Positions 12,222 to 61,439 of a stretch of 64,000 nt of DNA are shown piece by piece. The stretch covers positions 55,808 to 119,807 of the forward strand of contig NIVC01002215.1 of assembly GCA_002269645.1 (NCBI GenBank). The letters run 5' to 3'. The DNA is from Macrostomum lignano (Eukaryota). Both the position numbers and the translations under genes were made by a program. The notes beneath the pieces are model-generated. The model searched no databases, was not told the origin of the DNA, and saw only the letters and a program-made list of their open reading frames with translations. The number at the start of each line of letters is the position of its first letter. Positions within the stretch are counted from its first letter, which is position 1.

Positions 12222-12224
<3 letters not shown>

Positions 12225-12268
<44 letters not shown>

Positions 12269-12641: not shown

Positions 12642-13319
12642 GAGAATTGGGTCTGGTGTCTAAAGGCCACCGCCTGCTATTCTGGGATATCGCAATCAGC
12701 GTCAATCAATGATCAATCAATGAACGTCTTAGGGTATTCGAATCGTTCCAAAGGATCCTATCCGATACATGAGAAATATGGAGGCCTTTAACTAAAAAAT
12801 TCAACGTAATTCGGTTTCTCAATCAACAGCCAACAACTCTGCTCTCGGTAATCAAATAACAGACTGGCAATGCTTACCGAATGTTATGATTTCGCTCAGA
12901 GATGAAGACCCAGGTGTTCCTTTCTTTTCAAGTCTTTTTTGGGACCGCTCCGAGTTAGAGGTTTTGAGGCTCCCAGAGTGCTTGTATCTTCTATACTCTT
13001 TTTATGCAAGAACCGGTTATTTCCAGTTGAGTTTGATGGGATGAAGAGGTCAATTCTTAGGAATTTGACCCTTTTACAGTTGAATTGAATTTTAGTGAAC
13101 AAAATAGAAATGGAGACACTGTGTTACCTTATGTGGTGTTCAAAAGTTGCAATGGGCTCATGATTACGAGTAAATGGTAACATAATTAATTGTTTTAGTT
13201 TGACTGCGAGTGTTCCCACTATTATACTTATAGTAGCATTTCATGAATGAACGATAATCTACACTGCGACAGCTCTCTAGCTGTCTTGTCCCAACAAGGT
13301 GATCGTCAGCAAAATGATC

Positions 13320-28885: not shown

Positions 28886-31800
28886 ATGTCTTCCGCCAAC
28901 TCGGCATCTACCGCTTCGGCTGCTGCGGCGGCTGCTGCCTCGTGCGGCATCCTCCGCTCCGAGGAGTACCTGGGCTTCCGCAGCGCCGTCGCGCACCGCC
29001 GCGTGGTGGTGGACGATGACGACTCGCTGGAGTGGAGCATGTACGATGCCGGGCCGCGGCACGTGCGCTGCCCGCTGGTGTGCCTGCCGCCCTGCTCCGG
29101 CACCGCCGAGGTACCTCATGGTCTCTTAGGTCTCTCGTGAGCCTCCCGAAATTGTAATAAACCCTAACCCTAACCCTAATAATTGCAGCTTAAAATCCTA
29201 CTTGAAAAACTGGTCTGAATTGCCCCAACCAGCTGTGAGAATCGCCCCTAGACAGCTGTGAGAATCGCTTCTAGACAGCTGTGAGAATCGCCCCTAGACA
29301 GCTGTGAGAATCGCCCCTAGACAGCTGTGAGAATCGCCCCTAGACAGCTGTGAGAATCGCCCCTAGACAGCTGTGAGAATCGCCCCTAGACAGCTGTGAG
29401 AATCGCTTCTAGACAGCTGTGAGAATCGCCCCTAGACAGCTGTGAGAATCGCCCCTAGACAGCTGTGAGAATCGCCCCTAGACAGCTGTGAGAATCGCCC
29501 CTAGACAGCTGTGAGAATCGCCCCTAGACAGCTGTGAGAATCGCCCCTAGACAGCTGTGAGAATCGCCCCTAGACAGCTGTGAGAATCGCCCCTAGACAG
29601 CTGTGAGAATCGCCCCTAGACAGCTGTGAGAATCGCCCCAGACAGCTGTGAGAATCGCCCCTAGACAGCTGTGAGAATCGCCCCTAGACAGCTGTGAAAA
29701 TCGCCCCTAGACAGCTGTGAGAATCGCCCCAGACAGCTGTGAGAATCGCCCCAGACAGCTGTGATATTTACTCGTACTGCTGAAGTGTTTGAGAGATGAA
29801 GTTTGACGCTCAAAACTAGGCCTGCATCGGAGGCTGCCCTGCAGTTGCTACCCATCCCAGCTCAACATGAACTCATTCTCGTTCCGCCGCAGGTCTTCTT
29901 TCGCCAGGTGCTTTACCTCACTAGTTTTGGCTTTCGCGTCATCGCCCTGGACTACCCGGTGGTGTGGAGCCTCGGGGACTGGTGTCTCAGCTTCCAGCGG
30001 CTGCTGGACCACCTGAGCCTGGCGCGAGTCCACATCTTCGGCGCCAGCCTGGGCGGCTTCCTGGCGCAGAAGTTCGCCGAACAGGAACACGGCCGGGCCA
30101 GGCGGGTTGCCTCCCTGGTGCTCTGCAACTCCTTCGTGGAGACGTCAATCTTTCAGCAGACTAATTCCGTTAAGTCGTGAGTAGGGTTGAGTAGGCTCTA
30201 CAGCGCTGCTGGGGGGAATCAGCTGCTCCACAGTGCTGCTGCTGCTGGGGGGGGAATCAGCTGCTCCACAGTGCCGCTGCTGCTGGGGGGGGGAATCAGC
30301 TGCTCCACAGTGCTGCTGCTGCTGGGGGGGGGGGGGGAATCAGCTGCTCCACAGTGCCGCTGCTGCTGGGGGGGGAATCAGCTGCTCCACAGTGCTGCTG
30401 CTGCTGGGGGGGGGGGAATCAGCTGCTCCACAGTGCCGCTGCTGCTGGGGGGGGAATCAGCTGCTCCACAGTGCTGCTGCTGCTGGGGGGGGGAATCAGC
30501 TGCTCCACAGTGCCGCTGCTGCTGGGGGGGAATCAGCTGCTCCACAGTGCTGCTGCTGCTGGGGGGGAATCAGCTGCTCCACAGTGCTGCTGCTGCTGGG
30601 GGGGGGGAATCAGCTGCTCCACAGTGCTGCTGCTGCTGGGGGGGGGAATCAGCTGCTCCACAGTGCTGCTGCTGCTGGGGGGGGAATCAGCTGCTCCACA
30701 GTGCTGCTGCTGCTGGTGGGGGGAATCAGCTGCTCCACAGTGCTGCTGCTGCTGGGGGGGGGGGAATCAGCTGCTCCACAGTGCTGCTGCTGCTGGGGGG
30801 GGGAATCAGCTGCTCCACAGTGCTGCTGCTGCTGGGGGGGGGAATCAGCTGCTCCACAGTGCTGCTGCTGCTGGGGGGGGGGGGAATCAGCTGCTCCACA
30901 GTGCTGCTGCTGCTGGGGGGGGGGAATCAGCTGCTCCACAGTGCTGCTGCTGCTGGGGAGGGGGAATCAGCTGCTCCACAGTGCTGCTGCTGCTGGGGGG
31001 GAATCAGCTGCTCCACAGTGCTGCTGCTGCTGGGGGGGGAATCAGCTGCTCCACAGTGCTGCTGCTGCTGGGGGGAATCAGCTGCTCCACAGTGCTGCTG
31101 CTGCTGGGGGGGAATCAGCTGCTCCACAGTGCTGCTGCTGCTGGGGGGAATCAGCTGCTCCACAGTGCTGCTGCTGCTGGGGGGGGGGAATCAGCTGCCC
31201 CACAGTGCTGCTGCTGCTGGGGAGGGGGAATCAGCTGCTCCACAGTACTGCGGAGGCAGTAAGCCTTCTGTTGTTATCCCCAATCCCACAGCTTCTGGCT
31301 GCTGCCAGCTGTAGTGCTCCGCTCAACGGTGATGCACAATCTTGACAGCATCAGCTCTCGGGACCGGGAGATCGCGGACTCCATGCTGTTCCTGAACCAC
31401 TCGCTGCACAGCCTGAGCCAGCAGCAGCTGGCCAGCCGGCTCACCCTCAACTGCCAGGATGACTATGTTGAGCCGCACAAGCTGCAGGGCTTGCCCGTGA
31501 CTCTGATTGATGTGAGAGACAGGGCGGGCTTATTCTTTGCTTACTACTAACAAGTTTATTAGTAGCATGACTTGTGCACATCTGAGCATCAAAATGTCGT
31601 TTGCTTTGCTAGGTGTTCGACGACAACGCGCTGACATCCCGGGTACGCGAGGAGACCTACAAGTGCTACCCGGATGCCAAGCGGGCCCATCTCAAGAGTG
31701 GGGGGAATTTTCCCTACCTTAGCCGGGCTAGCGAGGTTAACCTGCACCTACAGGTGGGTACAGTGCGTCACTCATTCAGTGTCAGTTCATCGTGTGTGTG

Positions 31801-34528: not shown

Positions 34529-37500
34529 ATGCAAGGCCACCATCTCTCTGGGCAGGCCGGTGGCGGAGGCGGTCACAAGAAGAAGGAGATTTACAAGTAC
34601 GAGGCGCCCTGGCCGGTGTACAGCATGAACTGGTCCGTGCGGCCGGACAAAGGCTTTCGGCTGGCGCTCGGCTCCTTTGTTGAGGAGTACAATAACAAGT
34701 TGCAGGTGGGTCTCTGCTGGCTGCTGAGTTTGACTGAGTATGGGCGGAGTGTGTGTGAACCAGTGAGTGACTGGGACGGAGTGTGTGTGAACCAGTGAGT
34801 GACCGGGACGGAGTGTGAACCAGTGAGTGACCGGGACGGAGTGTGTGTGAACCAGTGAGTGACCGGGACGGAGTGTGTGTGAACCAGTGAGTGACCGGGA
34901 CGGAGTGTGTGTGAACCAGTGAGTGACTGGGACGGAGTGTGTGTGAACCAGTGAGTGACCGAGACGGAGTGTGTGTGAACCAGTGAGTGACTGGGACGGA
35001 GTGTGTGTGAACCAGTGAGTGACCGGGACGAAGTGTGTGTGAACCAGTGAGTGACCGGGACGGAGTGTGTGTGAACTAGTGAGTGACCGGGACGGAGTGT
35101 GTGTGAACCAGTGAGTGACCGGGGCGGAGTGTGTGTGAACCAGTGAGTGACCGGGACTGTGTGTGAACCAGTGAGTGACCGGGACGGAGTGTGTGTGAAC
35201 TAGTGGTTGACTGGGACTGTGTGTGAACCAGTGAGTGACTGGGACTGTGTGTGAACCAGTGAGTGACTGGGACTGTGTGTGAACCAGTGAGTGACTGGGA
35301 CTGTGTGTGAACCAGTGAGTGACCGGGACTGTGTGTGAACCAGTGAGTGACTGGGACTCTGTGTGAACCAGTGAGTGACTGGGACTGTGTGTGAACCAGT
35401 GAGTGACCGGGGCGGAGTGTGTGTGAACCAGTGAGTGACAGGGACGGAGTGTGTGTGAACCAGTGAGTGACCGGGACTGTGTGTGAACCAGTGAGTGACC
35501 GGGACTGTGTGTGAACCAGTGAGTGACCGGGACTGAGTGTGTGTGAACGAGTGAGTGACCGGGACGAAGTGTGTGTGAACCAGTGAGTGACCGGGACGAA
35601 GTGTGTGTGAACCAGTGAGTGACCGGGGCGGAGTGTGTGTGAACCAGTGAGTGACCGGGACGAAGTGTGAACCAGTGAGCGACCGGGACTGTGTGTGAAC
35701 CAGTGAGTGACCGGGACGGAGTGTGTGTGAACTAGTGGTTGACTGGGACAGTGTGTGAACCAGTGAGTGACTGGGACAGTGTGTGAACCAGTGAGTGACT
35801 GGGACTGTGTGTGAACCAGTGAGCGACCGGGACTGTGTGTGAACCAGTGAGTGACCGGGACGGAGTGTGTGTGAACTAGTGGTTGACTGGGACAGTGTGT
35901 GAACCAGTGAGTGACTGGGACAGTGTGTGAACCAGTGAGTGACTGGGACTGTGTGTGAACCAGTGAGTGACTGGGACTGTGTGTGAACCAGTGAGTGCCC
36001 GGGACTGTGTGAACCAGTGAGTGACTGGGACTGTGTGTGAACCAGTGAGTGACTGGGACTGTGTGTGAACCAGTGAGTGACCGGGACGGAGTGTGTGTGA
36101 ACCAGTGAGTGACTGGGACGGAGTGTGTGTGAACCAGTGAGTGACCGAGACGGAGTGTGTGTGAACCAGTGAGTGACCGAGACGGAGTGTGTGTGAACCA
36201 GTGAGTGACTGGGACTGTGTGTGAACCAGTGAGTGTCCGGGAATCGGTCAGAATGTGTGAATCAGTGAGTGTCCGAGAATCGGACAGAATGTGAATCAGT
36301 GAGTGTCCGGGAATCGGACAGAGTGTGTGAATCAGTGAGTGTCCGAGAATCGGACAGAATGTGTGAACCAGTGAGTGTCCGAGAATCGGACAGAATGTGA
36401 ATCAGTGAGTGTCCGAGAATCGGTCAGAATGTGAATCAGTGAGTGTCCGAGAATCGGACAGAATGTGAATCAATGAGTGTCCGGGAATCGGACAGAATGT
36501 GTGAATCAGTGAGTGTCCGAGAATCGGACAGAATGTGTGAACCAGTGAGTGTCCGGGAATCGGACAGACCTGGCACAGAAGCTGGCGAGAGCGTGTTCCA
36601 GAGTACAGTAAAGTATATTAAAGGGACATTAAAGAACATCAAAATCCCACACCCGCCGCAGATCGTCGCTTTGGACGACGAGCGTGGAGAGCTGACCTGC
36701 CGCAGCACCTTCGACCACCCGTACCCGACCACGCGCATTATGTGGATGCCCGACAGCAAGGGCTCCGCCGGCTCGGCCGACCTGCTGGCCACCAGCGGCG
36801 ACTACCTGCGGGTCTGGCGGGTCGTCTCCGACACCGAGACCAAGCTGGAGTGCCTGCTTAACAACAACAAGAACTCCGACTTCTGCGCTCCGCTCACCTC
36901 CTTCGATTGGAACGAAGTCGACCCGAACATACTCGGCACCTCCAGCATCGACACCACCTGCACCATCTGGGGACTCGAGGTGCGAGCCGACAACTGACTC
37001 AGTCTTGACAGTTCGGACTGACCCAGTCTTGACCCACTTGAACGATCAGCCTTGACCCACCAGACTGACCCAGCATTGACCCATCAGACTGACCCAGCAT
37101 TGACCCACCAGACTGACCCAGTATTGATTCACCAGACTGACCCAGCCTTGACTCATCGGAATGACCAGCCCTGACATACTTGAACGACCAGTCTGGACCC
37201 ACAATATTGACCCGGCATTGGCCCGCTTGAACGACCAGTCTGGACCCACAGGACTGACCCAGCCTTCACCCACCAGACTGACCCAGCATTGACCCACCAG
37301 ACTGACCAGCATTGACCCACCAGACTGACCCAGCCTTGACCCACCAGACTGACTAGCCTTGACCCACCAGACTGACCAGCCTTGACCCACCAGGCTGACC
37401 AGCATTGACCCACCAGACTGACTAGCCTTGACCCACCAAACTGACCAGCCTTGACCCACCAGACTGCCCAGCCTTGACCCACCAGACTGACCAGCCTTGA

Positions 37501-38955
37501 CCCACCAGACTGCCCAGCCTTGACCCACCAGACTGACCAGCCTTGACCCACCAGACTGACCAGCACTGACCCAACCTATCCAATTAACGATAGTTGCTCT
37601 TACAGACTGGCAATCCGCTCTCAAAGTTGACCCAAAGCTATTCTCCGTTATTCTGTGCGACGAGCCTCTGAACTCATGAACTCTGCCACATTCCGCGCCA
37701 ACAGACTGGCCAGGTGGTGGGGCGCGTGGTCAGCGGCCACGTGAAGACCCAGCTGATTGCGCACGACAAAGAAGTTTACGACATCGCCTTCAGCCGACAG
37801 GGCGGCGGTCGGGACATGTTCGCTAGCGTCGGCGCCGACGGCTCCGTGCGGATGTTCGACCTGCGCCACCTGGAGCACTCCACCATCATCTACGAGGACC
37901 CCGGCCACAGCCCGCTGCTGCGGCTCGCCTGGAACCGGCAGGACCCCAACTACCTGGCCACCTTCGCCATGGACGCCTCCGAGGTGATCGTCCTTGACAC
38001 CCGCGTGCCCTGCACCCCCGTGGCGCGCCTCACCAACCACAGAGCCTGCGTTAACGGGCTGGCCTGGGCGCCACACTCCGCCTGTCACATCTGCACTGCG
38101 GGTAAGGCTGCGAATTTTGGTGAACTGTGGTCTGTGAATGGGTGATTGGTGAACTTTTGTTCTGTGAATGGGTGATTGGTGAACTTTAGTTCTGTGAATG
38201 GGTCATTGATGAAATTTTGTTCTGTGAATGGGTGATCGGTGAACTGTGGTCTGTGAATGGGTGATTGGTGAACTTTTGTTCTGTGAATGGGTGATTGGTG
38301 AACTTTAGTTCTGTGAATGGGTCATTGATGAAATTTTGTTCTGTGAATGGGTGATCGGTGAACTGTGGTCTGTGAATGGGTGATTGGTGAACTTTTGTTC
38401 TGTGAATGGGTGATTGGTGAACTTTAGTTCTGTGAATGGGTCATTGATGAAATTTTGTTCTGTGAATGGGTGATCGGTGAACTGTGGTCTGTGAATGGGT
38501 GATTGGTGAACTTTTGTTCTGTGAATGGGTCATTGATGAAATTTTGTTCTGTGAATGGGTGATCGGTGAACTGTGGTCTGTGAATGGGTGATTGGTGAAA
38601 TTTTGTTCTGTGAATGGGTGATTGGTGAAATTTTGTTCTGTGAATGGGTGATTGATGAACTTTTTTTCTGTGAGTGGGTGATTGGTGAACTGTGGTCTGT
38701 GAATGGGTGATGGGTGGGATCGGACCCGAGTGTAATGATTCGATACCGATTAGAAATTCGCATGCTCTGCTTGGCTCCGCAGCGGACGACTTCCAGGCGC
38801 TGATCTGGGACCTGCAGCAAATGCCGCGGGCCGTGGAGGACCCGATCCTGGCCTACACCGCGGCCGGCGAGATCAACCAGATCCAGTGGAGCAGCGCCCA
38901 CAACGGCTGGATTGGCATCTGCTACGGCAACTGCCTGGAGATCCTGCGGGTCTGA
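34529..38955 (+). CDS. DCAF7: DDB1- and CUL4-associated factor 7 (WDR68/HAN11), 354 aa, 4 exons
   Basis: Exons 34529-34705, 36662-36979, 37705-38101 and 38783-38955 with consistent phases. Near-verbatim DCAF7 motifs [47 protein letters not shown] and [11 protein letters not shown]. Confidence 0.98.
34750..36568. repeat. ~28-32-bp minisatellite filling DCAF7 intron 1
   Basis: Unit GAACCAGTGAGTGACCGGGAC(GGAG)TGTGTGT, grading into a GTCCGAGAATCGGACAGAAT variant at the 3' end. Confidence 0.97.
37010..37575. repeat. ~22-bp minisatellite, DCAF7 intron 2
   Basis: Unit CCAGCCTTGACCCACCAGACTGA. Confidence 0.93.
38115..38710. repeat. ~29-30-bp minisatellite with higher-order period, DCAF7 intron 3
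   Basis: Unit TCTGTGAATGGGTGATTGGTGAACTTTTGT in a recurring order of variants. Confidence 0.95.
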
Positions 38956-40354: not shown

Positions 40355-40881
40355 ATGGCTAAAGCAGCTCACGAAGGTCACGAGTTCGAATGCAACATCT
40401 GTCTGGAGCCGGTGACGGAGCCGGTGGTCAGCCTGTGCGGCCACCTGTTCTGCTGGCCCTGCGTGCACCGCTGGCTCACCGCCAGGCCGCAGGCGCCCAG
40501 CTGCCCGGTGTGCAAGGGCCCCATCAGCGAAGACGCGCTGGTCCCCGTGTATGGTCGTTCCGCCCGATCCGGCCCCGAGCTCGGGCCGCCCGTGCCGCCG
40601 AGGCCCAGCGGCCACCGGCTGAGAGAGCAGAGCGGCCAGCGGCACCTCCTGCTGGGCGGCCTGCGCATTTCCGTCGGAATCGACACGGCGTCGGACAACG
40701 GCGGCCTTGGACTGTCCCTGACAGGTGCGTGTGTGTGTCTGTCTGTGTGTTTTGTGTTTGTCTGTCTGTCTGTCTGTCTGCCTGTGTGTGTGTTTTGTGT
40801 GTCTGTCTGTCTGTCTGTCTGCCTGTCTGTGTGTTTTGTGTTTGTCTGTCTGTCTGCCTGCCTGTCTGTGTGTTTTGTGTT

Positions 40882-40928
<47 letters not shown>

Positions 40929-41045
40929 GTGTTTTGTGTTTGTCTGTCTGTCTATCTGTCTGTCTGTCTGTGTGTTTTGTGTTTGTCTGTCTGTCTGTCT
41001 GTCTGTGTGTTTTGTGTTTGTCTGTCTGTCTGTCTGTGTGTTTTG

Positions 41046-41076
<31 letters not shown>

Positions 41077-41084
41077 GTGTTTTG

Positions 41085-41115
<31 letters not shown>

Positions 41116-41125
41116 GTGTTTTGTG

Positions 41126-41172
<47 letters not shown>

Positions 41173-41182
41173 GTGTTTTGTG

Positions 41183-41221
<39 letters not shown>

Positions 41222-41231
41222 GTGTTTTGTG

Positions 41232-41262
<31 letters not shown>

Positions 41263-41272
41263 GTGTTTTGTG

Positions 41273-41323
<51 letters not shown>

Positions 41324-41334
41324 GTGTTTTGTGT

Positions 41335-41369
<35 letters not shown>

Positions 41370-41609
41370 TGTATGTCTGTCTGTCTGTTTTGTGTCTGTC
41401 TGTCTGTCTGTTTTGTGTCTGTCTGTCTGTCTGTCTTAGTGCCTGTACAATAAAACGCAGCCCTTCCCCCCGCTGATCCGCCAGACCTGGCGCTGGAGCT
41501 GCAGGAGTCCCTGGAGGAGCTGGAGGTGGCCCACCTGCTCGGGCCGCTGGCCAGCCGCCTCTTCCTGTGGATCGCCGCCGTATTCGGCCTGTGGCTGCTG
41601 ATTGTGTGA
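40355..41609 (+). CDS. RNF5: RNF5/RNF185-family membrane-anchored C3HC4 RING E3 ligase, ~164 aa, 2 exons
   Basis: Exons 40355-40724 and 41485-41609. [37 protein letters not shown]; C-terminal anchor [19 protein letters not shown] resembles the RNF185/RNF5 tail. RNF5 and RNF185 cannot be distinguished; start codon is the best guess. Confidence 0.85.
40725..41437. repeat. Compound (GTCT)n/(GT)n microsatellite filling the RNF5-like intron
   Basis: Starts at the splice donor. Source of the CVCLS/TDRQ ORFs. Confidence 0.97.
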
Positions 41610-42027
41610 CCGCCGCCGTGCCATGACAGGCTGTCCCTGCAGTGCCCTCTCCGCACCGCTGCATCTCCAAGCCATGACAGGCGGACAGCCAGCAGTCTTT
41701 TTCTGCACAAGTCCAGGTTGTCTAGCACAGATGAATATCGCTATTTTATTGCACGATGCAAGCATCACTGAGTTGCAAGGCTAATATTTATTTACTGAGA
41801 TATATTTGTACAGCCGCTATCTACTCTTGTACCTATTCAAGTACACACAGTACTTTTGAATGAACAATAAACGATGGGTTCAAGCAGTTTGTCAGCACCG
41901 AGGTGCAAATCAACTCTGAGATGGCAGTTTATTGTTTAATTTATTCGGGCGCTGGCATTGGCAAAGCTGATTTCACACAGTTACGGCTATGACGCAGAGT
42001 TTGAGCATCCGAGGACAAGCAGATCCT

Positions 42028-42225
42028 TCACTTGCTTCCGCAGCAGCCGTTCTGCTTGCAGCATTCTCCGCCTGGGTTGCAGTCGGCGCCGCACTTGCAG
42101 TCCTGGCACTGCGGGCTGCTGCACTTGCCTGCGGGTCAGGCAGGGTGGCAGCGGTTAAAGCCTGGAAGCGAGGCGATGCGACTTTATTGAAAGTGGCAGC
42201 ACCTGACAACGCACTCACCGTCCAT
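42028..42225 (-). CDS. Metallothionein-like peptide, 35 aa, 9 Cys, 2 exons (not in ORF track)
   Basis: Exon 1 42225-42219 (ATG GAC G), 90-nt intron GTGAGT...CCCGCAG, exon 2 42128-42028. Product MDGKCSSPQCQDCKCGADCNPGGECCKQNGCCGSK. Upstream CATAAATA at 42321-42314; downstream AATAAA at 41945-41940 and 41933-41928. Confidence 0.82.
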
Positions 42226-42313
42226 TCTGATTACGGGGCTGGCTCTGTAAGCTGGTGAATGCTTTGATGGATTCTGGGCAGAGGTTGGCGTGGCTCCGGC
42301 AGCGGGGCGGCCC

Positions 42314-42427
42314 TATTTATGCTGCTGTTTTTATCGCTGCCACCCCAAGTACTGGCCACGCCACCTCAGCCAGGTGAGTCGGTCATGTGACTGACCCTGA
42401 GCATGCTTGTTTATAAAGCAGAGATAA
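42314..42427 (-). promoter_or_regulatory. Candidate promoter of the metallothionein-like gene
   Basis: TATA-like CATAAATA (42314-42321), AP-1-like TGAGTC (42375-42380), M-box/CLEAR-like GTCATGTGAC (42382-42391) and GATA site AGATAA (42422-42427). Motif matches only. Confidence 0.4.
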
Positions 42428-43596: not shown

Positions 43597-46500
43597 TCAC
43601 TTCATGTACTTCTGCCGCACCTGGTCCAGCAGGTCGTTCAGAGCCGGCTCCGACAGGGCGTCGTTGAAGTTGTTCAGGCAGGCCAGCAGCTCCGGGTTCA
43701 GCGCGAAAGGGTAGTGCCTGCGGGCGGGGAGCAGTCAGCGCTGAGTGGCCAAGCACTGTCTATGGCCCTATCTGTGGCACTATGGCACTGTCCATGGCCC
43801 TATCTGTGGCACCGTCTATGGCACTGTCCATGGCTCTGTCTATGGCCCTGTCTATGACCCTGTCTATACCACTGTCAATGGCCCTGTCTATGGCCCTAAA
43901 GGCGGAGTAGCCAAGCCCTGCGTGGTCAAGCCCACTCACATAGCCTTAGCCGAGTACCGCTTGAACCGAATGCAGAAGTCCAGGCAATTAAAGGACACCC
44001 AGTACTTCCAGTAGTTGATGACGGGCATGAGGCCCAGCTGCTTGGCCCGGCTGACCGGATAGTCGGGTGGGAGGCTGGACACCTCATCGCCGCCGACAGC
44101 GCCCTCGTGGATGCGCGTGAGATACTTGAGCACCTCGCCTACGTGCGGCACCAGCGGCGGCTCGGTGGAGCCCATGTTGCGGAAGTAGTCCCTGGCAAAG
44201 GCGGCCTGGTCGCCAAGGCAGCTGGTGAGGGCACGCAGCCGCTGGCGCACGGAGCGGCCGGGCCAGGGCAGCTGGTCCAGACTGATGAGGCTGAACACGA
44301 TGGCCAGGTGCGAGTTGAAGTTGTGCAGCCGCTTGAGCTCGTCCGCCACCTTCAGGAAATAGCTGAGCAGCCGCTGCCGCTCCTTCATTTTGGTGGTCTT
44401 TGAGCCCAGCACCAGGGTCTTCACCCAGAAGCCCAGCCGGTTGAAGGAGTTGATGAAGGCCTGCAGGTTGGCGAACTGCTCCCGGCTGCGGCCGCGCACG
44501 AAGGCCAGGTACTCCTGGGGTAGGGAGTGTTCAGGAGGATGTGAGAGTGTTCAGGAGGATGTGGAAGTGTTCAGGAGGATGTGAAAGTGTTCAGGAGGAT
44601 GTGAGAGTGTTCAGGAGGATGTGGAAGTGTTCAGGAGGATGTCAGAGTGTTCAGGAGGATGTGGGAGTGCTCAGGACATGGGAGTGCTCAGGACATGGGA
44701 GTGCTCAGGACATGGGAGTGCTCAGGACATGGGAGTGCTCAGGACATGGGAGTGCTCAGGACATGGGAGTGCTCAGGACATGGGAGTGCTCAGGACATGG
44801 GAGTGCTCAGGACATGGGAGTGCTCAGGACATGGGAGTGCTCAGGACATGGGAGTGCTCAGGACATGGGAGTGCTCAGGATATGGGAGTGCTCAGGATAT
44901 GGGAGTGTTCAAATGAATGTGGGTGTGCTTAATAAGCAGGAATAATTTTCGGGAAGATAATGTTTAGGATGTTGATGTTTGCGTACAAGCAAGCAAGATT
45001 TTCATTTTTAGTATATAGGAAGGTAATGTTCATGAAGCTGGGATAATGTTCAAAAGCTGGGACAATGTAAAAGATGCGAACCTGAATCTCGATCCGCCTG
45101 TACAGGCGCGAGTCCATGAGGGTGATCTGCTCGGCCAGCTGACGCGGCGTGAAGTCGGTGATGCTACGCCGTTGTGCCGCCAAGGCGGAGGCGGCGGCTG
45201 CCGCAGCGGGGTCGGGCTGGGCGGCCTCGGCCTGGCGCTGCCGCACGCCGGCGAGCGCGGTGGCGAGGATCTGCGCCTCCGGCAGGCGGCCCTCGCCGAC
45301 AAGGCGCTGCTTAAGCAGGCCGAGGTCGTCCAGCATCTCCTGGTCGCATTCGGAGCTGACCTGATGGGGATGAAAAGAAAGAGCTGGTCTGCCTACTGCC
45401 AGAGGAGATTTGCTCAATGGAGATCTGCTCAATGGAGATCTGCTTAATGGAGATCTGCTTAATGGAGATCAGCTTAATGGAGATCTGCTTAATGGAGATC
45501 TGCTTAATGGAGATATGCTCAATGGAGATTTGCTCAATGGAGATTTGCTCAATGGAGATCTGCTCAATTGAGATTCGCGATCCGGGCAGTCCCCACCCCC
45601 GCCAGCGCCCCAAGCCGCACCTCGTCCAGCACGCGGACCAGGAAGGCGAAGGCCGGCTTCCACAGCAGGTCGCGGCCGGCCGCCAGGAAGAAGATCGCCC
45701 GCGACACGATGCGGCCGACCAGCTCGTGCGAGCTGGCGAAGCAGCGGTAGGTGGCCGCCAGGCTCTCGCAGAACAGCAGGTGCTGCCTGGCGCCCTCGGT
45801 GGCGGGGCAGCAGGCGTGCACCAGCAGGGCGTCCAGCGGCCCCGCCCGCACCCGGATTCGGTCCTCGGCCTCCGCCACGGCCGGGTCAGTGGCCGGGTCC
45901 CACACCAGGAACTCCTCCAGCTGGTCGTAGAAGTACGCCTCCAGCGGCTCCTCCGACGAGGCATCAGCCGCCGCCGCTGCCGCCGTCTCGGAAGTCGCCG
46001 ACAACAGCGGCTTCGTGGTCGGTGGGGTTGGCGGCAGCTGCTCGTACAGCGAGTCCTCGCCGCCTGGCATCGCTGAGGGCGCCGCCGCCGCCGCCGGTGC
46101 TGCTCCGGCGTCCTCGTCGCTGCCGAGGTCGTCAGCCATGGGGATCGGCGGCTGCTGGGCGGCCGAGGCGGCGGGCACGTGGCGGACCCGAGCGGTGTGG
46201 CTGATGGTGGTGTTGCGGTGCACGATGAGTCCCGCCCTCGGCTGCCGGCACTCGTGCGTCACCAGCGAGATTGTCTTGCTGCGCTCGTGCGGCGCGTCGC
46301 TGGAGACCAGCTTGTGCCAGCGCGAATGGAACATGTTGAAGGAGTCCATGGAGTGCCTGCTGAAGTCCGTCAGCTCGCGGTCGTAGCCAGCCAGCATCTG
46401 CATGTACTGGTTCACTGCAATGAGTGACAATGGATGAACTGGTTCACTGCAATGAGTGACAATGGATGAACTGGTTCACTGCAATGAGTGACAATGGGTG

Positions 46501-49500
46501 AACTGGTTCACTGCAATGAGTGACAATGGGTGAACCAGTTCACCAGTAAGTGTGGCACTGAGTGAACCAGTGAGTGTGGAATGTGAGTGAACCAGTGAGT
46601 GAGGCACTGAGTGAACAAGTGAGTGTGGAATGTGAGTGAACCAGTGAGTGAGGCACTGTGTGAACCTGTGAGTGTGATAATGAGTGAACCAGTGACAGTT
46701 TCATTGCCGATGACCCAGTTTCCCCTAATTTGCATGCTCAAAGAAAGAAAAAAACTGGGTCGCCATAGCAACAACAGAGAAAAATATCGAAAAGCCGAGT
46801 AGAAACGAATGGAGAGTGGAAAAGTGTTCACGCGGTCGCTGCGCAGAACAAGAGCCAGTCAGCCAGCCAAGTTCCCTGTGCAGTCCAGGCTGGTTACAAT
46901 AAGCAGCCGCTAATAGGCCTGGCCAGGCACAGCAGGGCTAAGCGGGAGTTGCCGCCTCGCTGCCCCCTTTGCTTATCGCTCCGCCGGCGCCGCGGGGCAC
47001 GCAGCCGCAGGGAGGCTCGGGTTGCACACTCCCAGCCCCCCCCCCAAATTCCAAAATTCCAGCCGATTCCAAAGCCGGCTGCGCCCCGAGCGGCCCTGGC
47101 CCGATTCTCTGACAGGCCTCGCTTTAAACTGCCTCGGCTGCAGCGAGTCGCCTGAGAGTTGCGGCGGCTCCGCTGACTCAGCCAGCCGCGGGGCTGTCCT
47201 TCGAATCCTTGGTGGCTGCCCCCTGCATGCATGGCGGCGCAGCTGCCGCCTCCATCGCGGCTTTCAGATCCCGCCGGGCCAGCGATACGGAGATGACGAA
47301 TCGGTGGGTGGGGGATTGGGAAGACAAGCCGCTGCTTCTGCGCATTTGCCGCTCGATTCCCCTCCGATCCCCTGAGGATCTTTTGCGTCCGAGACACTCC
47401 AGCAACTTAGCGATTGACCCTCGGCAACTGCGCGCCGCCCCGGCCTCTCCCGGAATTTTGTTTACGACAATCGCGTGACGCCCCGCCCGCCCCTCAGCCG
47501 CTCGTGCGGAAGCCGCGCGAGACTTTTCTGCCGGCAATCCGAGCGGAGCCTCCTCGGCAGCGCACGCCACTGCCGGGGCGAGTCTGCGGCGAGTAAAAAG
47601 CCGCCAGTCCCAGCCTCCTTTGCTTCATCTCTAATTAAACGCCGCTTCCGGCGAACGCTGGCCGCCCGAGGCCGCAGGCTGAGAAAAATGAGAGACGGAG
47701 CCCGGGGGGGGGCAGGCGGATGCTGAGCGGAGCGGGCCGCTGATGAAGACAAAATAGGAGAATAAGACGGAGCAGCTTGGGCGACCGGGATGCGGATGCC
47801 CCGGGCTTCCCATTCACCGGGATAATTGGCGTGGGACTTCAATTTTCAGGGGGGAGGGCGGCAGCCTCCCGAATCCCCACCTGCGGGCGGCACAACTCCC
47901 TCAACGCCGCAGTCAATCAGCTGGCAGCTTCATCAGCTCAGCTCAGCCCATCTTTACAATCTTATTATTGACAGCCAGTTGTTTAGCAGCTCTGAACTGC
48001 CAGCTGAGATTAATTTGTGAGCGGTGAAAACCTTGCGTCCGCTCTCCTGCCCGTTGCTATGGAGCTCTGGCTCGCTGACTGACTCAATTTCTCCTTCGGA
48101 CACTGCCTGACACTGAATCTCTGATTCTGAATCTCTGACTGAATCTCTGACTCTGAATCTCTGACTCTGAATCTCTGACTCTGAATCTCTGACTGAATCT
48201 CTGACTCTGAATCTCTGACTCTGAATCTCTGACTCTGAATCTCTGACTCTCTGAACCCTAGCAGGACTCACCCAGACGTTGCGAAGGTTCCTCCGGCTTT
48301 CGCAGCGACACGACTGACTCGGACATCGGGTCGGACACGCTGCCGGGCGGCGGCGGCTTTGGCGGTGGCGACCCATCGGGCTGCGATGCCGGTGACGGCT
48401 GCTGCTTCTGCTGCTGCGGAGGCGGGGGAGGCGGCGGCGGCGGAAAGTCGCTGGCGCCGGACATGATGGAGTGGTAGCCGGACGTCGCATCCGACCGAAA
48501 GCTGGCGTCCCGGCCAGCCTCTGAGGAGGCGGCCAGCTGCTGCTGCTGCTGCTGCTCCTGGAGATGCGGCGGCAGTGGAAGCTGCGGCTGCGCCGGACCG
48601 AGCGCCAAACAGTCGGTGGCGGTGAGGGCCAGCGGCGGCCCAGAGGACATCACGACAGTCCGCGTGCGCACCACCTTCTGCCGGCGCCGCTTGCGAACCT
48701 TCCGCTTGTACAGCACGCCGTTGACGCTGACGAGGTCCTCGGTGAACTCCTCCTCGCTCTGCGTGGAGTCCTCGGAGCCGCCCGACTCCACCGAGGAGCC
48801 GATGCTGTCGGTCGAGCCGACGCTGCTGCCATTGTCGGTGCCAGCGGCCAGGAAGGAGGCGGAGGCGCCGGCCGCCGGGTCGTCAGCGGAGGGGCCCTGC
48901 AGGGATTTGAGCCGCTGGGAGACGGTGAGGATGCTCTGCATCATTTTCTCATCATCCAGGCAGCGGTCCAGCTCGGAGGCGGTGGGCAGCGAGTTCCTGG
49001 CCGGGGCGCTGGCGCTGCGGTGGGCGATACGGCGTTTCGGGTTTCGAGTGCTTGCCAAGAGCGGTATGGACAATATGAGAAAGTAAGAGCTGGTTTTCCC
49101 GGACCCCCCCCCTGCTTCCACCAGCTTCAGCCAGCGGGCACCAGTCGGTGACCCAAAAGTGCAGCCGGAGCCTCCGTCACCCCTGGGGCCGGGCGGCCAG
49201 CGCAGAGTTGAAGGGCGGCACAGGTGGGCCGGCAAGAAACCGGGCTAACAGGCTGCGAGTGGAACAGCTGGGGAATTGCAGCCGATCGCTACTTGGGTTT
49301 GCGGTGCCCTGGGAGGAGGAGTAGCGAATCCAGAATTGCCTTGAAAGGAAGAGAGAATCGAGATGCAACAAAAATACAAAAAAGAAAAGAAAGACATCGA
49401 TACTCACCAATCCAGCGAGTCCATTGGCAGTCCTTGGCAGGTCGCAATCAGAGCCTGAAACAGTTGGGGCAGGGCAAGACGGCTGTGTCTGAGAGACGGC

Positions 49501-52500
49501 AGGCAGTTAAATGCAACTTTCGCTTTCGCCTGGTTGGCTGGGCGCGGGGGGGGGGGGCGGGCAGCCACCAACCGGCAAAATCTGCAGCAAAAACCAAAGC
49601 AACAGGTTTTACAATCGTCTGAACTTGTTTATAAAGCGTTATGATATGTTTGTTATTCGGAAATGCTCTGCACTGCGCTTCACGCTTGGCCGTGCGAACT
49701 GGCTCAGTTTTTATGATGACGCATGACTTCAGGATAAACCGAAAGCCTGGGGTTTTCACACTGACTGCGCCTTCAGTTCACTTGTCTCACACAGCTCTGC
49801 CTGCCCTCGCCGACAGACCCCAGCTCCCGGACGCTTCTGCTCCCAACCCTTCTCATTTTCTCGCCACCCAGGATGGGCTGTGATAGCGGCCGAATCCAAT
49901 TTTGGAATTTGCACCGAGGGAGATCCCATAAGGCTGCCGAGCTGGGTGGGCGTGCATGCCAGCTGCCTGGACATCTAAGCAATCTGTACTGGGCGCGGAA
50001 TGGCAGAATTCAAAATCGAATCAATTTGTAATGGTATATTGGACTGATTGGCACACAGAGCAGTATTGGCAAGATACAGAGCGGGATTGGTGAGATACAG
50101 AGCGGGATTGGTGAGATACAGAGCGGGATTGGTGAGATACAGAGCGGGATTGTTGAGATGCAGAGCGGGATTGGTGAGATACAGAGCGGGATTGGTGAGA
50201 TACAGAGCGGGATTGGTGAGATACAGAGCGGGATTGGTGAGATACAGAGCGGGATTGGTAAGATACAGAGCGGGATTGGTGAGATACAGAGCGGGATTGG
50301 TGAGATACAGAGCGGGATTGGTGAGATACAGAGCGGGATTGGTGAGATACAGAGCGGGATTGGTGAGATACAGAGCGGGATTGGTGAGATACAGAGCGGG
50401 ATTGGTAAGATACAAAACGGGATTAGTAAGATACAGAGCGGGATTGGTGAGATACAGAGCGGGATTTGTGAGATACAGAGCGGGATTGGTGAGATACAGA
50501 GCGGGATTGGTGAGATACATGCAGAGTGGGATTGGCAAGATACAGAGCGGGATTCGTGAGATACAGAGCGGGATTGGTGAGATACATGCAGAGTGGGATT
50601 GGTGAGATACAGAGCGGGATTGGTGAGATACAGAGCAGGATTGGTGAGATACAGAGCGGGATTGGTGAGATACAGAGCGGGATTGGTGAGATACAGAGCG
50701 GGATTGGTGAGATACAGAGCGGGATTGGTAAGATACAGAGCGGGATTGGTGAGATACAGAGCGGGATTGGTGAGATACAGAGCGGGATTGGTAAGATACA
50801 AAACGGGATTAGTAAGATACAGAGCGGGATTGGTGAGATACAGAGCGGGATTTGTGAGATACAGAGCGGGATTGGTGAGATACAGAGCGGGATTGGTGAG
50901 ATACATGCAGAGTGGGATTGGCAAGATACAGAGCGGGATTCGTGAGATACAGAGCGGGATTGGTGAGATACATGCAGAGTGGGATTGGTGAGATACAGAG
51001 CGGGATTGGTGAGATACAGAGCAGGATTGGTGAGATACAGAGCGGGATTGGTGAGATACAGAGCGGGATTGGTGAGATACAGAGCGGGATTGGTGAGATA
51101 CAGAGCGGGATTGGTAAGATACAGAGCGGGATTGGTGAGATACAGAGCGGGATTGGTGAGATACAGAGCGGGATTGGTGAGATACAGAGCGGGATTGGCA
51201 AGATGAGAAAGAATTCTCACTCACTGCCAGAATTATTTATGACATTAAAGTGCAGAATTATTTGACTGTTTGCACATATTGCGCTACTATAAGTAGGCCA
51301 ATCTTGGTTAATAATTCAGAAAAGATCAGGCAAAAAGTCAATCGGGTAAAATTATGCTGAGCTGAATCTGACAATCAATATTGATAAGTTTCTGATCAAT
51401 CTCGTACTGTCAAGTTTGATTGGATTAATGCCACAACTAGAAACCAGCTTAAAGGCTTTACCTTCTGCGCCATGGCCGACAATCGCCAATGGAAAGCTGC
51501 AGTGCGCGGAAACCGCGGGCCAAGAGTTGCGTCAGAGCCCGGAGATAACAGCAGCGCAGGTTTTAAAATACGACCGCTCGGCGCCCCGCCCACGCAAACA
51601 CAGACAAGTTAGATGGGCTCAGATGATCAAAATTAAACAGACCTGAGTCACCCAGTTAAACAATGTCAGCACAAGTTGGAGCGGCTCAAAGCCGAGAATC
51701 CGATTTCCGATTCGGGAATGCGCTGAGAATTTCTGCTTTCGCTTGTGCCTTAAATAGGCCGGCAGTGCCCAGGCTGGGTGCTGCACGGGCACTCTCCTTA
51801 CCTCACCCTCGGACTGGGGGCCTCAGTGGGGGGGGGCAACCAGTTTAAAACAATAAACGCAGCACGCTTTGGTTGGCGCTGTTTGCACAGGCAGGCGGCC
51901 CCCCGCTGTGCCAGGAGGGGTGGGGGCGCAGGAGAGCCCGCCAGTTCTCACTGCAGCAGGGCAGGAGTGAAGCGCCTGCAGGTCTCCGTGCGGAAAGCCC
52001 GGCGGCGGGGGAAGGGCTTGGGGGTGGGTAGCGGGTCACGTGATAAGCCAGCAAAGCGCATGCATTTAACTTAATACATTTTGCCACAAATATTGAATAT
52101 TAACAAAAACTAATAATTTAATGACTGAAATAGTTACTAATCCAACGCATTGATTTCGCAATCAATACCAAATTGGACTTTGATCAGCAGTCCCCAGCCC
52201 CCTCTATCCCTCAGCAGTCCCCAGCCCCCTCTGTCCCTCAGCAGTCCCCAGCCCCCTCTGTCCCTCAGCAGTCCCCAGCCCCTCTGTCCCTCAGCGGTCT
52301 CCAGTCCCTGAGTACACCATAGCCCACCTCAATCTTTCCCTGGTAGCCGCTGATCAAGCCGTTGCCGGCGATGTGGTTGAAGGCGTCAGAGGACAGCAGC
52401 GCCTTGTCCAGCCAGCAACAGAGCACCGCCAGAGTGCCGTTGGCCGCTGACATCAGGCTGTTGAACTCCTGGCGCTGCCTGCGGGAAAGTGCGGCAATCG

Positions 52501-53630: not shown

Positions 53631-55549
53631 TGGTGTTAAGTGGGTCAGATCACTTATAAATAGTAGGTATCTCAAGTCATTTGCAATTTGATTGGGACAA
53701 TTAGGTAGGTCAAGTAAATAGATAATGTCAATATAGCAATCTGATTTATATTTTTTGCAAGGTGGGACAATTATAATTGGCAGTCAAATATAAATATAGA
53801 GGTCAAAACCAATGTAATTAAGAAAGAGGCTATAACTTACATATAAATACTCTATCTAATTTTCTTCAAAAGTAAAAGTAAAACTTACATAATATATAAT
53901 AGAATATTTCTAATAAATAACAATAATAACATTTACCAAATTTGTATCATCAGTAGCCTGGCTAAAGTTTGTTTTAACAACAAGTTGTGATGTCATTGCT
54001 GATTTTTAAAGCATGCAAAAATTGTAAATGCATTTATAATATACAAAAATGTATTTAACCAATTCATATAAATAAAACAATGATAAAACTAGGTTTTCTT
54101 AGAGGTACTTTAATAAACAATAAAACTCCTTTCGTCTAGGATAGAAAGAGTAAATTCTAGGCAAATTATGTGACAACAATTTACTGTTTAAAAATTAATT
54201 TACAATAATAGAATACATTATAAAAAATCTGAGTTCAACAAAAAGCAGAAGAAACATTATATCAAATTAAATTTTGGATTTGTTACTAGAATTATAAATA
54301 AAAGGGGCCTATGAAGTTTCTAAATTAAATAAAAAATCGACTTCTTCGATAATTATATTATTAAAATATCATTTAAAACTTCTTTCAACAAAAAAACACG
54401 GTAAAACTGAAATTGCAGAGCAAAATTACTGACGGCTATGTTAAACGGTGATTTTAGTGTTAAACGGTTTAATAAAGGAGCATGTTTTTCATGCATAATT
54501 TGACACACAATGACTATGAGTAAATGAAAGTTCGTCGGCTGTCCTATCGAGCTCAATCGTGAATTCAAACATTTTAGTAATAAATTTCAAAATAATTTAA
54601 AAGGCAAATTTCGTACAAAATTATGATGCTAACATTTTTTATCTAAGTTAATATGCACTTAACGCTATTAATTATACTTTAAAAATTCCTGCTTACTAAA
54701 TTTAAAAAACAAAAGATAAGGATTTAGTATATTTTTAGTAGGCTTTGTTTTTCTTTAACAACGAGGACGTCCGGATTGTTTTGTCTCATTTTTACAACCG
54801 CATGCGTAGAAACGTTCGAGTTCCGGGACCGGAAGTGGCACTTACCAATTAGTTTTAGGTCCTGTTTTTTAACTAAAATTCCTTAAATTCTTTAATTATT
54901 GTGCTAAAATATAGCAACTACAACTTAAATGTTCAAGCCCAGCTTAAATTCCGTCTGAGTGAAGGCTTAAATAAGATATTTCCACGAAACCAATTGTACG
55001 GTTGAGACAATTTCCTGGAATTGTAATTCCTGGAATCGTTATTAAAAGGCAGTGCTTATTGTCACAGTACCGTAAGTATAGTGGCCAAATTATTCCCACG
55101 GTACCGTGAGAATAACTTTGAACTTATTGTCACGGTACACTACAAAGATATATTATACTCCTAGCATAGTGTAGGCCTAAGGGCAATCAATATGCATCAT
55201 TGCATGAAACCGCCTAAAAATTTAATAAGTTTTAAGTTGCAAAATTGAATGTAAAACTAAACGAAATTGGAGTAGTATGGCTTATCAGTATATATACATT
55301 TTTAGGCTTATATTGTTGTTACAATTCTATATATATATATATGTTAGTCATCTTTTGTGCATATAATTTTTATGGTATAAACAATATCAATAGGACTAAA
55401 CCTTGAAGTTTCAAATTATGTTTCTTGAAAGCAATTAAAAAACAAACTAATTAACTAGGCCTATCTCATTACATTATAAACTTGTATTTAATAAATATTT
55501 GATTTCTTATTTTATCATCCTGATTCATCCATTATGTTTTTATATGCAC

Positions 55550-61321: not shown

Positions 61322-61439
61322 CTATAGAGCTATCTAGAAATTGTAGATTAAAAGAATATATTCATTTTTCAAAGCAACTGGTTCTATCTAAATAAAAGAA
61401 ACCAATATGCTTATTAGAAATAGCTTTACACTGAGCTTT

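What the first reader, a model, noticed from the sequence alone, without database searches (positions are those of the whole stretch)
42028..42225. Hidden 35-aa, 9-Cys single-domain metallothionein-like gene
Seen: a two-exon minus-strand gene below the ORF-track cutoff, with a 7-nt first coding exon, a perfect GTGAGT donor, a CCCGCAG acceptor, a TATA-like box ~90 nt upstream and two AATAAA signals downstream. It encodes MDGKCSSPQCQDCKCGADCNPGGECCKQNGCCGSK (C-x4-C-x2-C-x-C-x3-C-x5-CC-x4-CC), with no aromatic residues or His. Established: metallothioneins are small, Cys-rich, aromatic-free, and often begin with a tiny first exon; nine Cys is the ligand count of an M3-Cys9 cluster. Inference: this is one of the smallest single-domain animal MTs, with a Cys spacing I do not recognise from named MT families, and it is likely unannotated in this lineage.
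Basis: partly seen in the sequence, partly recalled or inferred. Interest (0 to 1): 0.85.

Follow-up and report, generated by a model that had tools for sequence, protein, structure and literature searches.

The report
Unannotated flatworm metallothionein-like mini-gene
A real but unannotated two-exon gene in the flatworm Macrostomum lignano encodes a 35-residue, 9-cysteine peptide that looks like a small metal-binding metallothionein, has one annotated but unnamed relative in the same species, and matches no named metallothionein family.

Summary
On the minus strand, ATGGACG (42225-42219) is followed by a GTGAGT donor and a 90-nt intron ending in CCCGCAG. Exon 2 (42128-42028) then completes MDGKCSSPQCQDCKCGADCNPGGECCKQNGCCGSK.

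The window is Macrostomum lignano. The reading frame is not a chance ORF. A HMMER search of 1.84 billion proteins gave one hit, M. lignano PAA92471.1, an 83-aa "hypothetical protein" with 18 Cys. It carries the same CKCGxxC[TN]PGG[DE]CCKxN core twice. Between the two genes, synonymous sites are near saturation and replacement sites are conserved (pS 0.61-0.92, pN 0.12-0.15). Third-position GC (0.89) equals that of the neighbouring genes. The paralogue's MDCK start matches MDGK only under the proposed splice.

The exact peptide is absent from a 15-billion-protein collection. Neither protein hits Pfam; the peptide and the module profile hit nothing in the PDB.

The metallothionein reading fits the composition: 26% Cys, one hydrophobic residue (the initiator Met), no signal peptide, and a 9-Cys module doubled in the paralogue. 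Metal binding and expression remain untested, and no MRE lies upstream. The likeness to the mollusc beta1 domain is suggestive for the paralogue and not significant for this peptide.

Verdict: a new lineage-specific metallothionein-like family, of moderate interest.

The parts
42383..42390 (-). Palindrome-like E-box TCACATGA, 165 nt upstream of the ATG. Possible regulatory element; function untested.
Evidence: TCACRTGA also occurs 308 nt upstream of the paralogue's ATG in L001. About 0.03 occurrences are expected per 600 nt in each locus.
42313..42321 (-). TATA-like box CATAAATAG, about 95 nt upstream of the ATG
   Evidence: No other ATG lies between it and 42225. The paralogue has AATAAAT at -71.
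42219..42225 (-). Coding part of exon 1: ATGGACG (Met, Asp and the first base of Gly). The transcription start is unknown.
   Evidence: The context is ATCAGAATGG. The resulting M-D-G-K start parallels the M-D-C-K start of paralogue PAA92471.1.
42129..42218 (-). 90-nt phase-1 intron, GTGAGT...CCCGCAG. An internal alternative acceptor CTTCCAG has its AG at 42163-42162.
   Evidence: The last intron of the neighbouring RasGEF gene (43939-43718) uses the same GTGAGTG donor and CCCGCAG|G acceptor. Intron GC is 0.59, against GC3 of 0.89 in the CDS.
42028..42128 (-). Exon 2 coding part, (G)GKCSSPQCQDCKCGADCNPGGECCKQNGCCGSK plus the stop TGA (42030-42028). It holds the whole 9-Cys module.
   Evidence: HMMER hit to PAA92471.1 at E 3.8e-4 in 1.84e9 proteins. 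tblastn to both modules of L001 gives E 3e-13 and 1e-10 in that locus. pS is 0.61-0.92 against pN 0.12-0.15. GC3 is 0.89, like the neighbouring genes.
41928..41945 (-). Two AATAAA polyadenylation signals (41945-41940 and 41933-41928), 82-100 nt after the stop
   Evidence: The convergent RNF5/185-like gene on the + strand has its last coding exon at 41553-41606, so the two genes lie tail to tail.

Best explanation
This is an independent, compact two-exon gene of Macrostomum lignano. It has its own TATA-like promoter, a 7-nt coding first exon, a 90-nt intron and AATAAA signals. It encodes a 3.5-kDa cytosolic peptide whose only possible structural principle is its nine cysteines.

The most likely function is that of a single-module metallothionein-like protein. 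The nine thiolates would wrap a small metal-thiolate cluster, by analogy a beta-type M(II)3Cys9 cluster or a Cu(I) cluster, and so buffer or sequester Zn, Cu or Cd.

It belongs to a small, so far unnamed flatworm family. The other known member, PAA92471.1, carries the same 9-Cys module twice, joined by an Ala/Ser-rich linker.

Shown: the gene structure in the DNA, homology to the paralogue, purifying selection on the reading frame, and codon bias like that of neighbouring genes.

Inferred: transcription, use of the 42219/42128 junction, metal binding, stoichiometry and physiological role.
For: Gene structure:
- All features were verified.

The frame is coding:
- There is one hit in 1.84 billion proteins, M. 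lignano PAA92471.1 / A0A267H2E1 (E 3.8e-4, 62% identity).
- Thirteen columns are invariant across the three modules: CKCG..C.PGG.CCK.N.C.
- Against the N-module, pS is 0.61 and pN 0.12 (Fisher p 0.003). Against the C-module, pS is 0.92 and pN 0.15 (p 4e-6).
- GC3 is 0.89, against 0.84-0.91 in the DCAF7, RNF5/185-like and RasGEF exons and 0.46-0.59 in the intron and UTRs.

The splice is needed and plausible:
- The exon 2 frame has no ATG and is closed by a TGA two codons upstream.
- The spliced N-terminus MDGK matches the paralogue's MDCK.
- The neighbouring RasGEF intron uses the same donor and acceptor type.

Metallothionein-like character:
- Cys makes up 25.7% of the peptide, arranged as CxC and CC motifs flanked by Lys.
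- There are no aromatic residues and no His. The only hydrophobic residue is the initiator Met, so there is no signal peptide.
- The paralogue has exactly 18 Cys, twice the 9-Cys module.
- AlphaFold2 finds no confident autonomous fold (pLDDT 63, pTM 0.32).

It is a separate gene:
- It lies between the polyadenylation region of the RasGEF gene and the convergent RNF5/185-like gene.
Against: - No RNA evidence could be obtained with these tools.
- The alternative CTTCCAG acceptor has the better pyrimidine tract and would give a 10-residue product.
- No Pfam family, metallothionein or other, matches this peptide or the paralogue even at E <= 10. No PDB chain matches the peptide or the module profile.
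- No MRE core (TGCRCNC) lies in the 600 nt upstream (0 found, 0.66 expected), so nothing points to MTF-1-type metal induction.
- Homologues are known only within one species. No relatives were found by word search or in JGI metagenomes.
- The selection signal rests on 19 codons, and it shows constraint since the duplication, not present-day function.
Confidence: 0.55

Rival explanations
1. It is a real, expressed Cys-rich peptide gene, but not a metal-storage or detoxification protein. The cysteines might instead serve as a redox buffer, a cross-linked structural component (for example of sperm or other specialised cells), or a zinc-dependent interaction module.
For: The evidence that the frame is coding is the same as for the best explanation. 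No named metallothionein family matches. No MRE lies upstream. Metallothionein status is defined by chemistry that was not tested.
Against: There is no signal peptide and no hydrophobic residue beyond the initiator Met, so a secreted, disulfide-knotted peptide is unlikely. The composition, the CxC/CC motifs with flanking Lys, and the 9 to 18 Cys modular doubling are what metallothioneins typically show (module logic as in PMC7826182 and PMC8476144).
Confidence: 0.25
2. It is a silent or decaying duplicate of the Mlig008448.g3-type gene. It was once coding but is no longer transcribed or correctly spliced.
For: No expression data are available here. The peptide is not in any protein collection searched. 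The M. lignano genome is highly duplicated (my own knowledge). The dN/dS signal dates from after the duplication, not from the present.
Against: The ORF, the start context, both splice sites, the TATA-like box and two polyadenylation signals are all intact. GC3 of 0.89 has been kept at the level of the neighbouring active-looking genes, although the paralogue has GC3 of 0.61. The presence of an intron rules out a processed pseudogene.
Confidence: 0.12
3. It is a chance open reading frame in GC-rich, repeat-rich DNA, or an untranslated part of the neighbouring RasGEF or RNF5/185-like transcripts.
For: The window is full of micro- and minisatellites that produce long Cys-rich pseudo-ORFs, for example at 40.7-41.4 kb and 12.2-12.7 kb.
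Against: It is the only non-repetitive Cys-rich ORF in the window, and TRF finds no repeat in it. It has a significant homologue with a coding-type substitution pattern. RasGEF has its own stop (43599-43597) and a downstream AATAAA. The RNF5/185-like gene is on the other strand and its coding sequence ends at about 41606.
Confidence: 0.02

Closest known systems
Macrostomum lignano hypothetical protein BOX15_Mlig008448g3 (PAA92471.1 / UniProt A0A267H2E1), 83 aa
   Same: Same species. Both modules carry the same core, CKCGxxC[TN]PGG[DE]CCK[KRQ]N[GN]C. The MD-x-K start is the same. Neither protein has aromatic residues. There are 9 Cys per module.
   Different: It has two modules joined by an Ala/Ser-rich linker, giving 18 Cys and one His. 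Its CDS is intronless (L001:5001-5252). Its GC3 is 0.61 against 0.89. The positions of the first two Cys and of the last pair differ (CxC against CC). It is annotated, but without a function.
Mollusc metallothionein beta1 domain (9 Cys, [CxC]x3-6[CxC]x3Cx5[CxC]x3[CxC]; Helix pomatia CdMT PDB 6QK5, Littorina littorea MT PDB 5ML1)
   Same: It is a 9-Cys C-terminal module with the identical central spacing CxC-x3-C-x5-C. It has a CKCG..C[T/N] stretch and a Lys-rich, aromatic-free composition. Both lineages are spiralian. The paralogue's N-module puts 7 of 9 Cys in ungapped register with beta1 (shuffle p 0.004), and its best BLASTP segment falls at the start of beta1 (motif from PMC7826182).
   Different: This peptide puts only 5 of 9 Cys in register (p 0.45). 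CC doublets replace the last two CxC pairs. The CTGxxxCxCxxxCxCK signature is absent. BLASTP gives E 0.087, and phmmer or profile searches of the PDB find nothing. Other mollusc domain motifs (alpha, delta, beta2) score about as well. Homology is therefore not shown.
Mono-modular ascidian/thaliacean metallothioneins (38-45 aa, single 12-Cys domain binding 4 M(II); PMC8476144)
   Same: They are single-module animal metallothioneins of about 40 residues, and the same module is multiplied in paralogues. That is the same architectural logic as the 35-aa and 83-aa pair here.
   Different: They have 12 Cys with a different motif ([CxC]x5[CxC]x2Cx2Cx2[CxC]x4[CxC]x3-6CC). They come from a different phylum. 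No sequence similarity was detected.
Crustacean and vertebrate beta-domains (M(II)3Cys9 clusters; my own knowledge, not tested here)
   Same: Nine cysteines per domain, which is the ligand count of a three-metal cluster.
   Different: The Cys spacing is different. These domains occur only within two-domain proteins. No Pfam hit.

Membership tests
Metallothionein (operational class) | Low molecular mass (below about 10 kDa) | tested here: met
   35 aa, 3.5 kDa.
Metallothionein (operational class) | High Cys content (about 15-30%) in CxC, CC and CxxC motifs | tested here: met
   9 of 35 residues are Cys (25.7%). The pattern is C-x4-C-x2-C-x-C-x3-C-x5-CC-x4-CC.
Metallothionein (operational class) | No or very few aromatic residues or His, and no hydrophobic core or signal peptide | tested here: met
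   No F, W, Y or H. The only hydrophobic residue is the initiator Met.
Metallothionein (operational class) | High metal content bound in metal-thiolate clusters | not testable with these tools
   This needs recombinant or native protein with ICP-AES, ESI-MS and CD. AlphaFold2 without metal gives no confident fold (pLDDT 63), which is compatible but not diagnostic.
Metallothionein (operational class) | Metal-responsive expression (common, not obligatory), e.g. MRE TGCRCNC in the promoter | tested here: not met
   No MRE cores in the 600 nt upstream, against 0.66 expected by chance. The paralogue has 1, about as expected. Expression itself is not testable here.
Any Pfam metallothionein family | A match to the family HMM | tested here: not met
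   No Pfam family of any kind matches at E <= 10. This holds for the peptide, a doubled peptide and the paralogue.
Mollusc metallothionein beta1 domain | Cys motif [CxC]x3-6[CxC]x3Cx5[CxC]x3[CxC] (PMC7826182, Table 1) | tested here: not met
   Only the central CxC-x3-C-x5-C is shared. 5 of 9 Cys are in register (shuffle p 0.45). The paralogue's N-module has 7 of 9 (p 0.004).
Mollusc metallothionein beta1 domain | Significant sequence similarity to solved mollusc metallothioneins (6QK5, 5ML1) | tested here: not met
   BLASTP gives E 0.087 for this peptide and 0.009 for the paralogue, each in a single pairwise comparison. phmmer and profile searches of the PDB give no hit at E <= 10.
Unnamed M. 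lignano Mlig008448.g3 family | Core CKCGxxC[TN]PGG[DE]CCKxN[GN]C within a 9-Cys module, with an MD-x-K start | tested here: met
   E 3.8e-4 against 1.84e9 proteins, and the only hit. Thirteen invariant columns. Coding-type divergence.

The most novel reading that the evidence does not exclude
The 9-Cys module may be the flatworm descendant of an ancestral spiralian beta1-type metallothionein domain. Platyhelminthes would then have had metallothioneins ancestrally, free-living Macrostomorpha would have kept them as mono- and bi-modular forms, and the parasitic lineages reported to lack metallothionein genes (PMC3561135) would have lost them. The window's gene would then be the shortest functional animal metallothionein, binding three divalent ions with a single module.
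Probability: 0.2. Interest if true: 0.6.

Novelty: new variant of a known kind. Interest (0 to 1): 0.45.

Why it matters
Parasitic flatworms have been reported to have no recognisable metallothionein genes, with phytochelatin synthase proposed as their main metal defence (PMC3561135). A 2024 review of M. lignano as a toxicology model never mentions metallothionein, although it reports lethality only above 330 uM Cd (PMC11641670).

A verified flatworm metallothionein-like family would give this genetically tractable model a candidate metal-handling gene and a candidate biomarker. At 35 residues it would fall below the 38-45 residues reported for most ascidian metallothioneins, which are mono-modular (PMC8476144). 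The natural one-module and two-module pair would also let the modular evolution described for mollusc and tunicate metallothioneins be tested. The case also shows that functional genes below the usual ORF cut-offs escape annotation.

Tried and rejected
- Exact look-up of the peptide in the 15-billion-protein collection: absent.
- Word-indexed homologue search with the peptide doubled to reach the 40-aa minimum: no candidates.
- Pfam on the peptide, the doubled peptide and the paralogue: nothing at E <= 10.
- PDB sequence search with the peptide and with a three-module profile: nothing at E <= 10.
- JGI metagenome scan with family patterns: 140 pattern matches, none confirmed.
- Organism identification through the RasGEF ORF and an exact look-up of the Gypsy ORF: no result. 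The hAT transposase ORF then gave M. lignano.
- A search for a second copy in the window or near the paralogue: none.
- Fungal origin (short intron, AT-rich blocks): considered at first, then rejected because of long repeat-filled introns, the animal gene content and the M. lignano match.
- Trans-splicing of exon 2 to a leader ending in AUG: this would put the AUG out of frame with the conserved ORF. Flatworm leader sequences are known to me only from memory, so this was not pursued.
- Promoter comparison: no MRE, ARE, AP-1 or HSE motif, and shared k-mers not above the shuffle expectation. Only the TCACRTGA E-box is shared.
- AlphaFold2 of exon 2: low confidence, so no fold search was run.
- Literature searches for flatworm, planarian or Macrostomum metallothionein genes and for Mlig008448: no description found.

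Full report
**1. What is in the sequence**

- ATGGACG (42225-42219) is followed by GTGAGT and a 90-nt intron ending in CCCGCAG (42218-42129).
- Exon 2 runs 42128-42028 and ends in TGA.
- The 108-nt CDS encodes MDGKCSSPQCQDCKCGADCNPGGECCKQNGCCGSK. It has nine Cys and no F, W, Y or H, and its only hydrophobic residue is the initiator Met.
- The ATG is the first one after a TATA-like CATAAATAG (42321-42313) and sits in the context ATCAGAATGG.
- Two AATAAA signals follow the stop, at 41945-41940 and 41933-41928.
- The alternative acceptor (AG at 42163-42162) gives MDGFNRCHPA*. Intron retention would give a 13-residue product.
- The genomic frame of exon 2 contains no ATG and is closed by a TGA two codons upstream. 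The conserved ORF can therefore be translated only after a phase-1 splice.

**2. Whose genome**

The window mixes 50-60% GC gene-rich DNA with about 30% GC blocks. It holds many micro- and minisatellites, Gypsy-type retroelements and a hAT/DUF4371 transposase.

The transposase ORF at 57004-58923 matches a UniRef protein of Macrostomum lignano (A0A1I8J6V9) at 100% identity over 88 residues and 97.6% over 208. The only homologue of the finding is also from M. lignano.

**3. Is it a gene or a chance ORF?**

- In all six frames of the window, only five stretches have at least 9 Cys in 33 residues without F, W, Y or H. Four are simple tandem repeats (distinct 6-mer fraction <= 0.24). The fifth is this exon, at 0.89. 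TRF finds no repeat inside the gene.
- A full HMMER scan of 1.84 billion representative proteins with exon 2 returned one protein at E <= 0.001: P0108 (E 3.8e-4, 62% identity). This is PAA92471.1 / A0A267H2E1, "hypothetical protein BOX15_Mlig008448g3" of M. lignano. It is encoded without an intron on contig NIVC01000051.1 of assembly GCA_002269645.1.
- That protein has 83 residues and carries the module twice. Thirteen columns are invariant among the three modules: CKCG..C.PGG.CCK.N.C.
- Over the 19 alignable core codons, differences concentrate at synonymous sites. Against the N-module, pS is 0.61 and pN 0.12 (Fisher p 0.003). Against the C-module, pS is 0.92 and pN 0.15 (p 4e-6).
- In the proposed frame GC3 is 0.89. 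This equals the DCAF7 (0.89), RNF5/185-like (0.84) and RasGEF (0.91) exons nearby. The intron and UTR-like flanks are at 0.46-0.59.
- Together these results exclude a chance ORF.

**4. The splice model**

No RNA data could be reached, so the junction is inferred. Three things support it.
- The conserved frame needs an upstream start in phase 1.
- The predicted N-terminus MDGK parallels the paralogue's MDCK.
- The last intron of the neighbouring RasGEF gene (43939-43718) uses the same GTGAGTG donor and CCCGCAG|G acceptor. The DCAF7 introns are ordinary GT-AG as well.

The alternative CTTCCAG acceptor cannot be excluded as a minor or regulatory isoform.

**5. Context**

- On the + strand, a DCAF7 orthologue lies at about 36.4-38.9 kb.
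- An RNF5/185-like RING gene follows, with exon 1 at 40385-40681 and a C-terminal membrane exon at 41553-41606.
- On the minus strand, a RasGEF-domain gene ends with an exon at 43717-43597 and has an AATAAA near 43005.
- The small gene lies between them. It is tail to tail with the RING gene and about 0.7 kb downstream of the likely RasGEF polyadenylation site, and it has its own TATA-like box. It is not part of either neighbour.

**6. What it most likely does**

The peptide cannot form a hydrophobic core and has no signal peptide, so it should stay in the reducing cytosol. There, nine thiols are expected to organise around metal ions rather than form disulfides.
- Cys content (25.7%), CxC and CC motifs flanked by Lys, the absence of aromatic residues and a mass of 3.5 kDa meet every sequence-level criterion of the metallothionein class.
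- The paralogue has exactly 18 Cys, so the unit of evolution is a 9-Cys module.
- This is the same modular logic documented for mollusc and tunicate metallothioneins (PMC7826182, PMC8476144).
- AlphaFold2 finds no confident metal-free fold (pLDDT 63). That is compatible but not diagnostic.
- Nine Cys is the ligand count of a beta-type M(II)3 cluster. This is an analogy from established metallothionein chemistry, not a result.
- Against inducibility of the MTF-1 type, no MRE core lies in the 600 nt upstream.
- Both paralogues carry a TCACRTGA E-box upstream, where about 0.03 would be expected in each. This is a post hoc lead only.

**7. Comparison with what is known**

- No Pfam family of any kind, metallothionein or other, matches either protein even at E <= 10.
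- No PDB chain matches the peptide or the module profile.
- The closest pattern is the mollusc beta1 domain, [CxC]x3-6[CxC]x3Cx5[CxC]x3[CxC] (PMC7826182, Table 1). I checked it against real sequences from PDB 6QK5 and 5ML1.
- The paralogue's N-module places 7 of 9 Cys in ungapped register with beta1 (shuffle p 0.004), and its best BLASTP segment falls at the start of beta1 (E 0.009).
- The window's peptide places only 5 of 9 Cys in register (p 0.45; BLASTP E 0.087). Other mollusc domain motifs score about as well.
- It therefore works like a metallothionein beta-domain on paper, but membership of the mollusc family, or of any named family, is not supported.

**8. Novelty**

- The exact peptide is absent from the 15-billion-protein collection.
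- The paralogue is annotated only as hypothetical.
- The open literature searched contains no described flatworm metallothionein gene.
- Parasitic flatworms are stated to lack such genes (PMC3561135).
- The 2024 M. lignano toxicology review does not mention metallothionein.
- At 35 residues this peptide would be shorter than the 38-45-residue mono-modular ascidian forms.
- I rate it a new, lineage-specific variant of a known kind of protein. It is of moderate interest to metallothionein and flatworm biologists, and that interest depends on expression and metal-binding tests.

Noticed in passing
L001:5001-5252 (M. lignano contig NIVC01000051.1): The annotated "hypothetical protein" PAA92471.1 is a two-module, 18-Cys, aromatic-free protein with an Ala/Ser-rich linker. 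It is itself an unrecognised metallothionein-like candidate. Its N-module fits the mollusc beta1 Cys pattern in 7 of 9 positions.
   Followed up: partly
window 42383-42390 and L001 4693-4700: A TCACRTGA E-box lies upstream of both paralogues, at -165 and -308 from the ATG. About 0.03 occurrences are expected per 600 nt in each.
   Followed up: partly
window 7282-10851 (-): An uninterrupted 1189-aa retrotransposon ORF. By eye it carries a gag-like region with a zinc knuckle, a reverse-transcriptase YQDD motif and an integrase-like C-terminus, which suggests Ty3/Gypsy type and possibly recent activity. The exact protein is not on record in the collection.
   Followed up: partly
window 17412-20903 (+): A second retroelement whose gag-like, RT-like and integrase-like parts lie in three separate ORFs. 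It is probably a degraded copy.
   Followed up: no
window 56093-58923 (-): A hAT-superfamily / DUF4371 transposase in two ORFs of 640 and 288 aa. Its homologues carry PF14291 and PF05699. It is 97.6-100% identical over two stretches (296 of 357 residues; a third stretch is 80% identical) to UniRef A0A1I8J6V9 of M. lignano. That entry is named "FAT domain-containing protein", which looks like a misnomer for a transposon-derived model.
   Followed up: partly
window 40700-41450, 12150-12700, 30190-31350, 49975-51225, 37050-37620: Long micro- and minisatellite arrays produce ORFs of 170-430 codons in several frames, among them Cys-rich CVCLSV-type repeats. Several lie inside introns: one in DCAF7 and one between the two RNF5/185-like exons. 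All these ORFs are artefacts.
   Followed up: partly
window 24001-26000, 54001-56000, 60001-64000: Sharp AT-rich blocks (GC 0.29-0.35) are embedded in DNA of 0.50-0.61 GC. Their origin was not examined.
   Followed up: no
window 43597-49235 (-): A multi-exon RasGEF-domain gene, with a Pfam RasGEF hit on ORF 43936-44499. The upstream ORFs at 44929-46430 and 48258-49235 have no Pfam match and are rich in low-complexity sequence. Whether they belong to this gene, and where it ends, was not worked out.
   Followed up: partly
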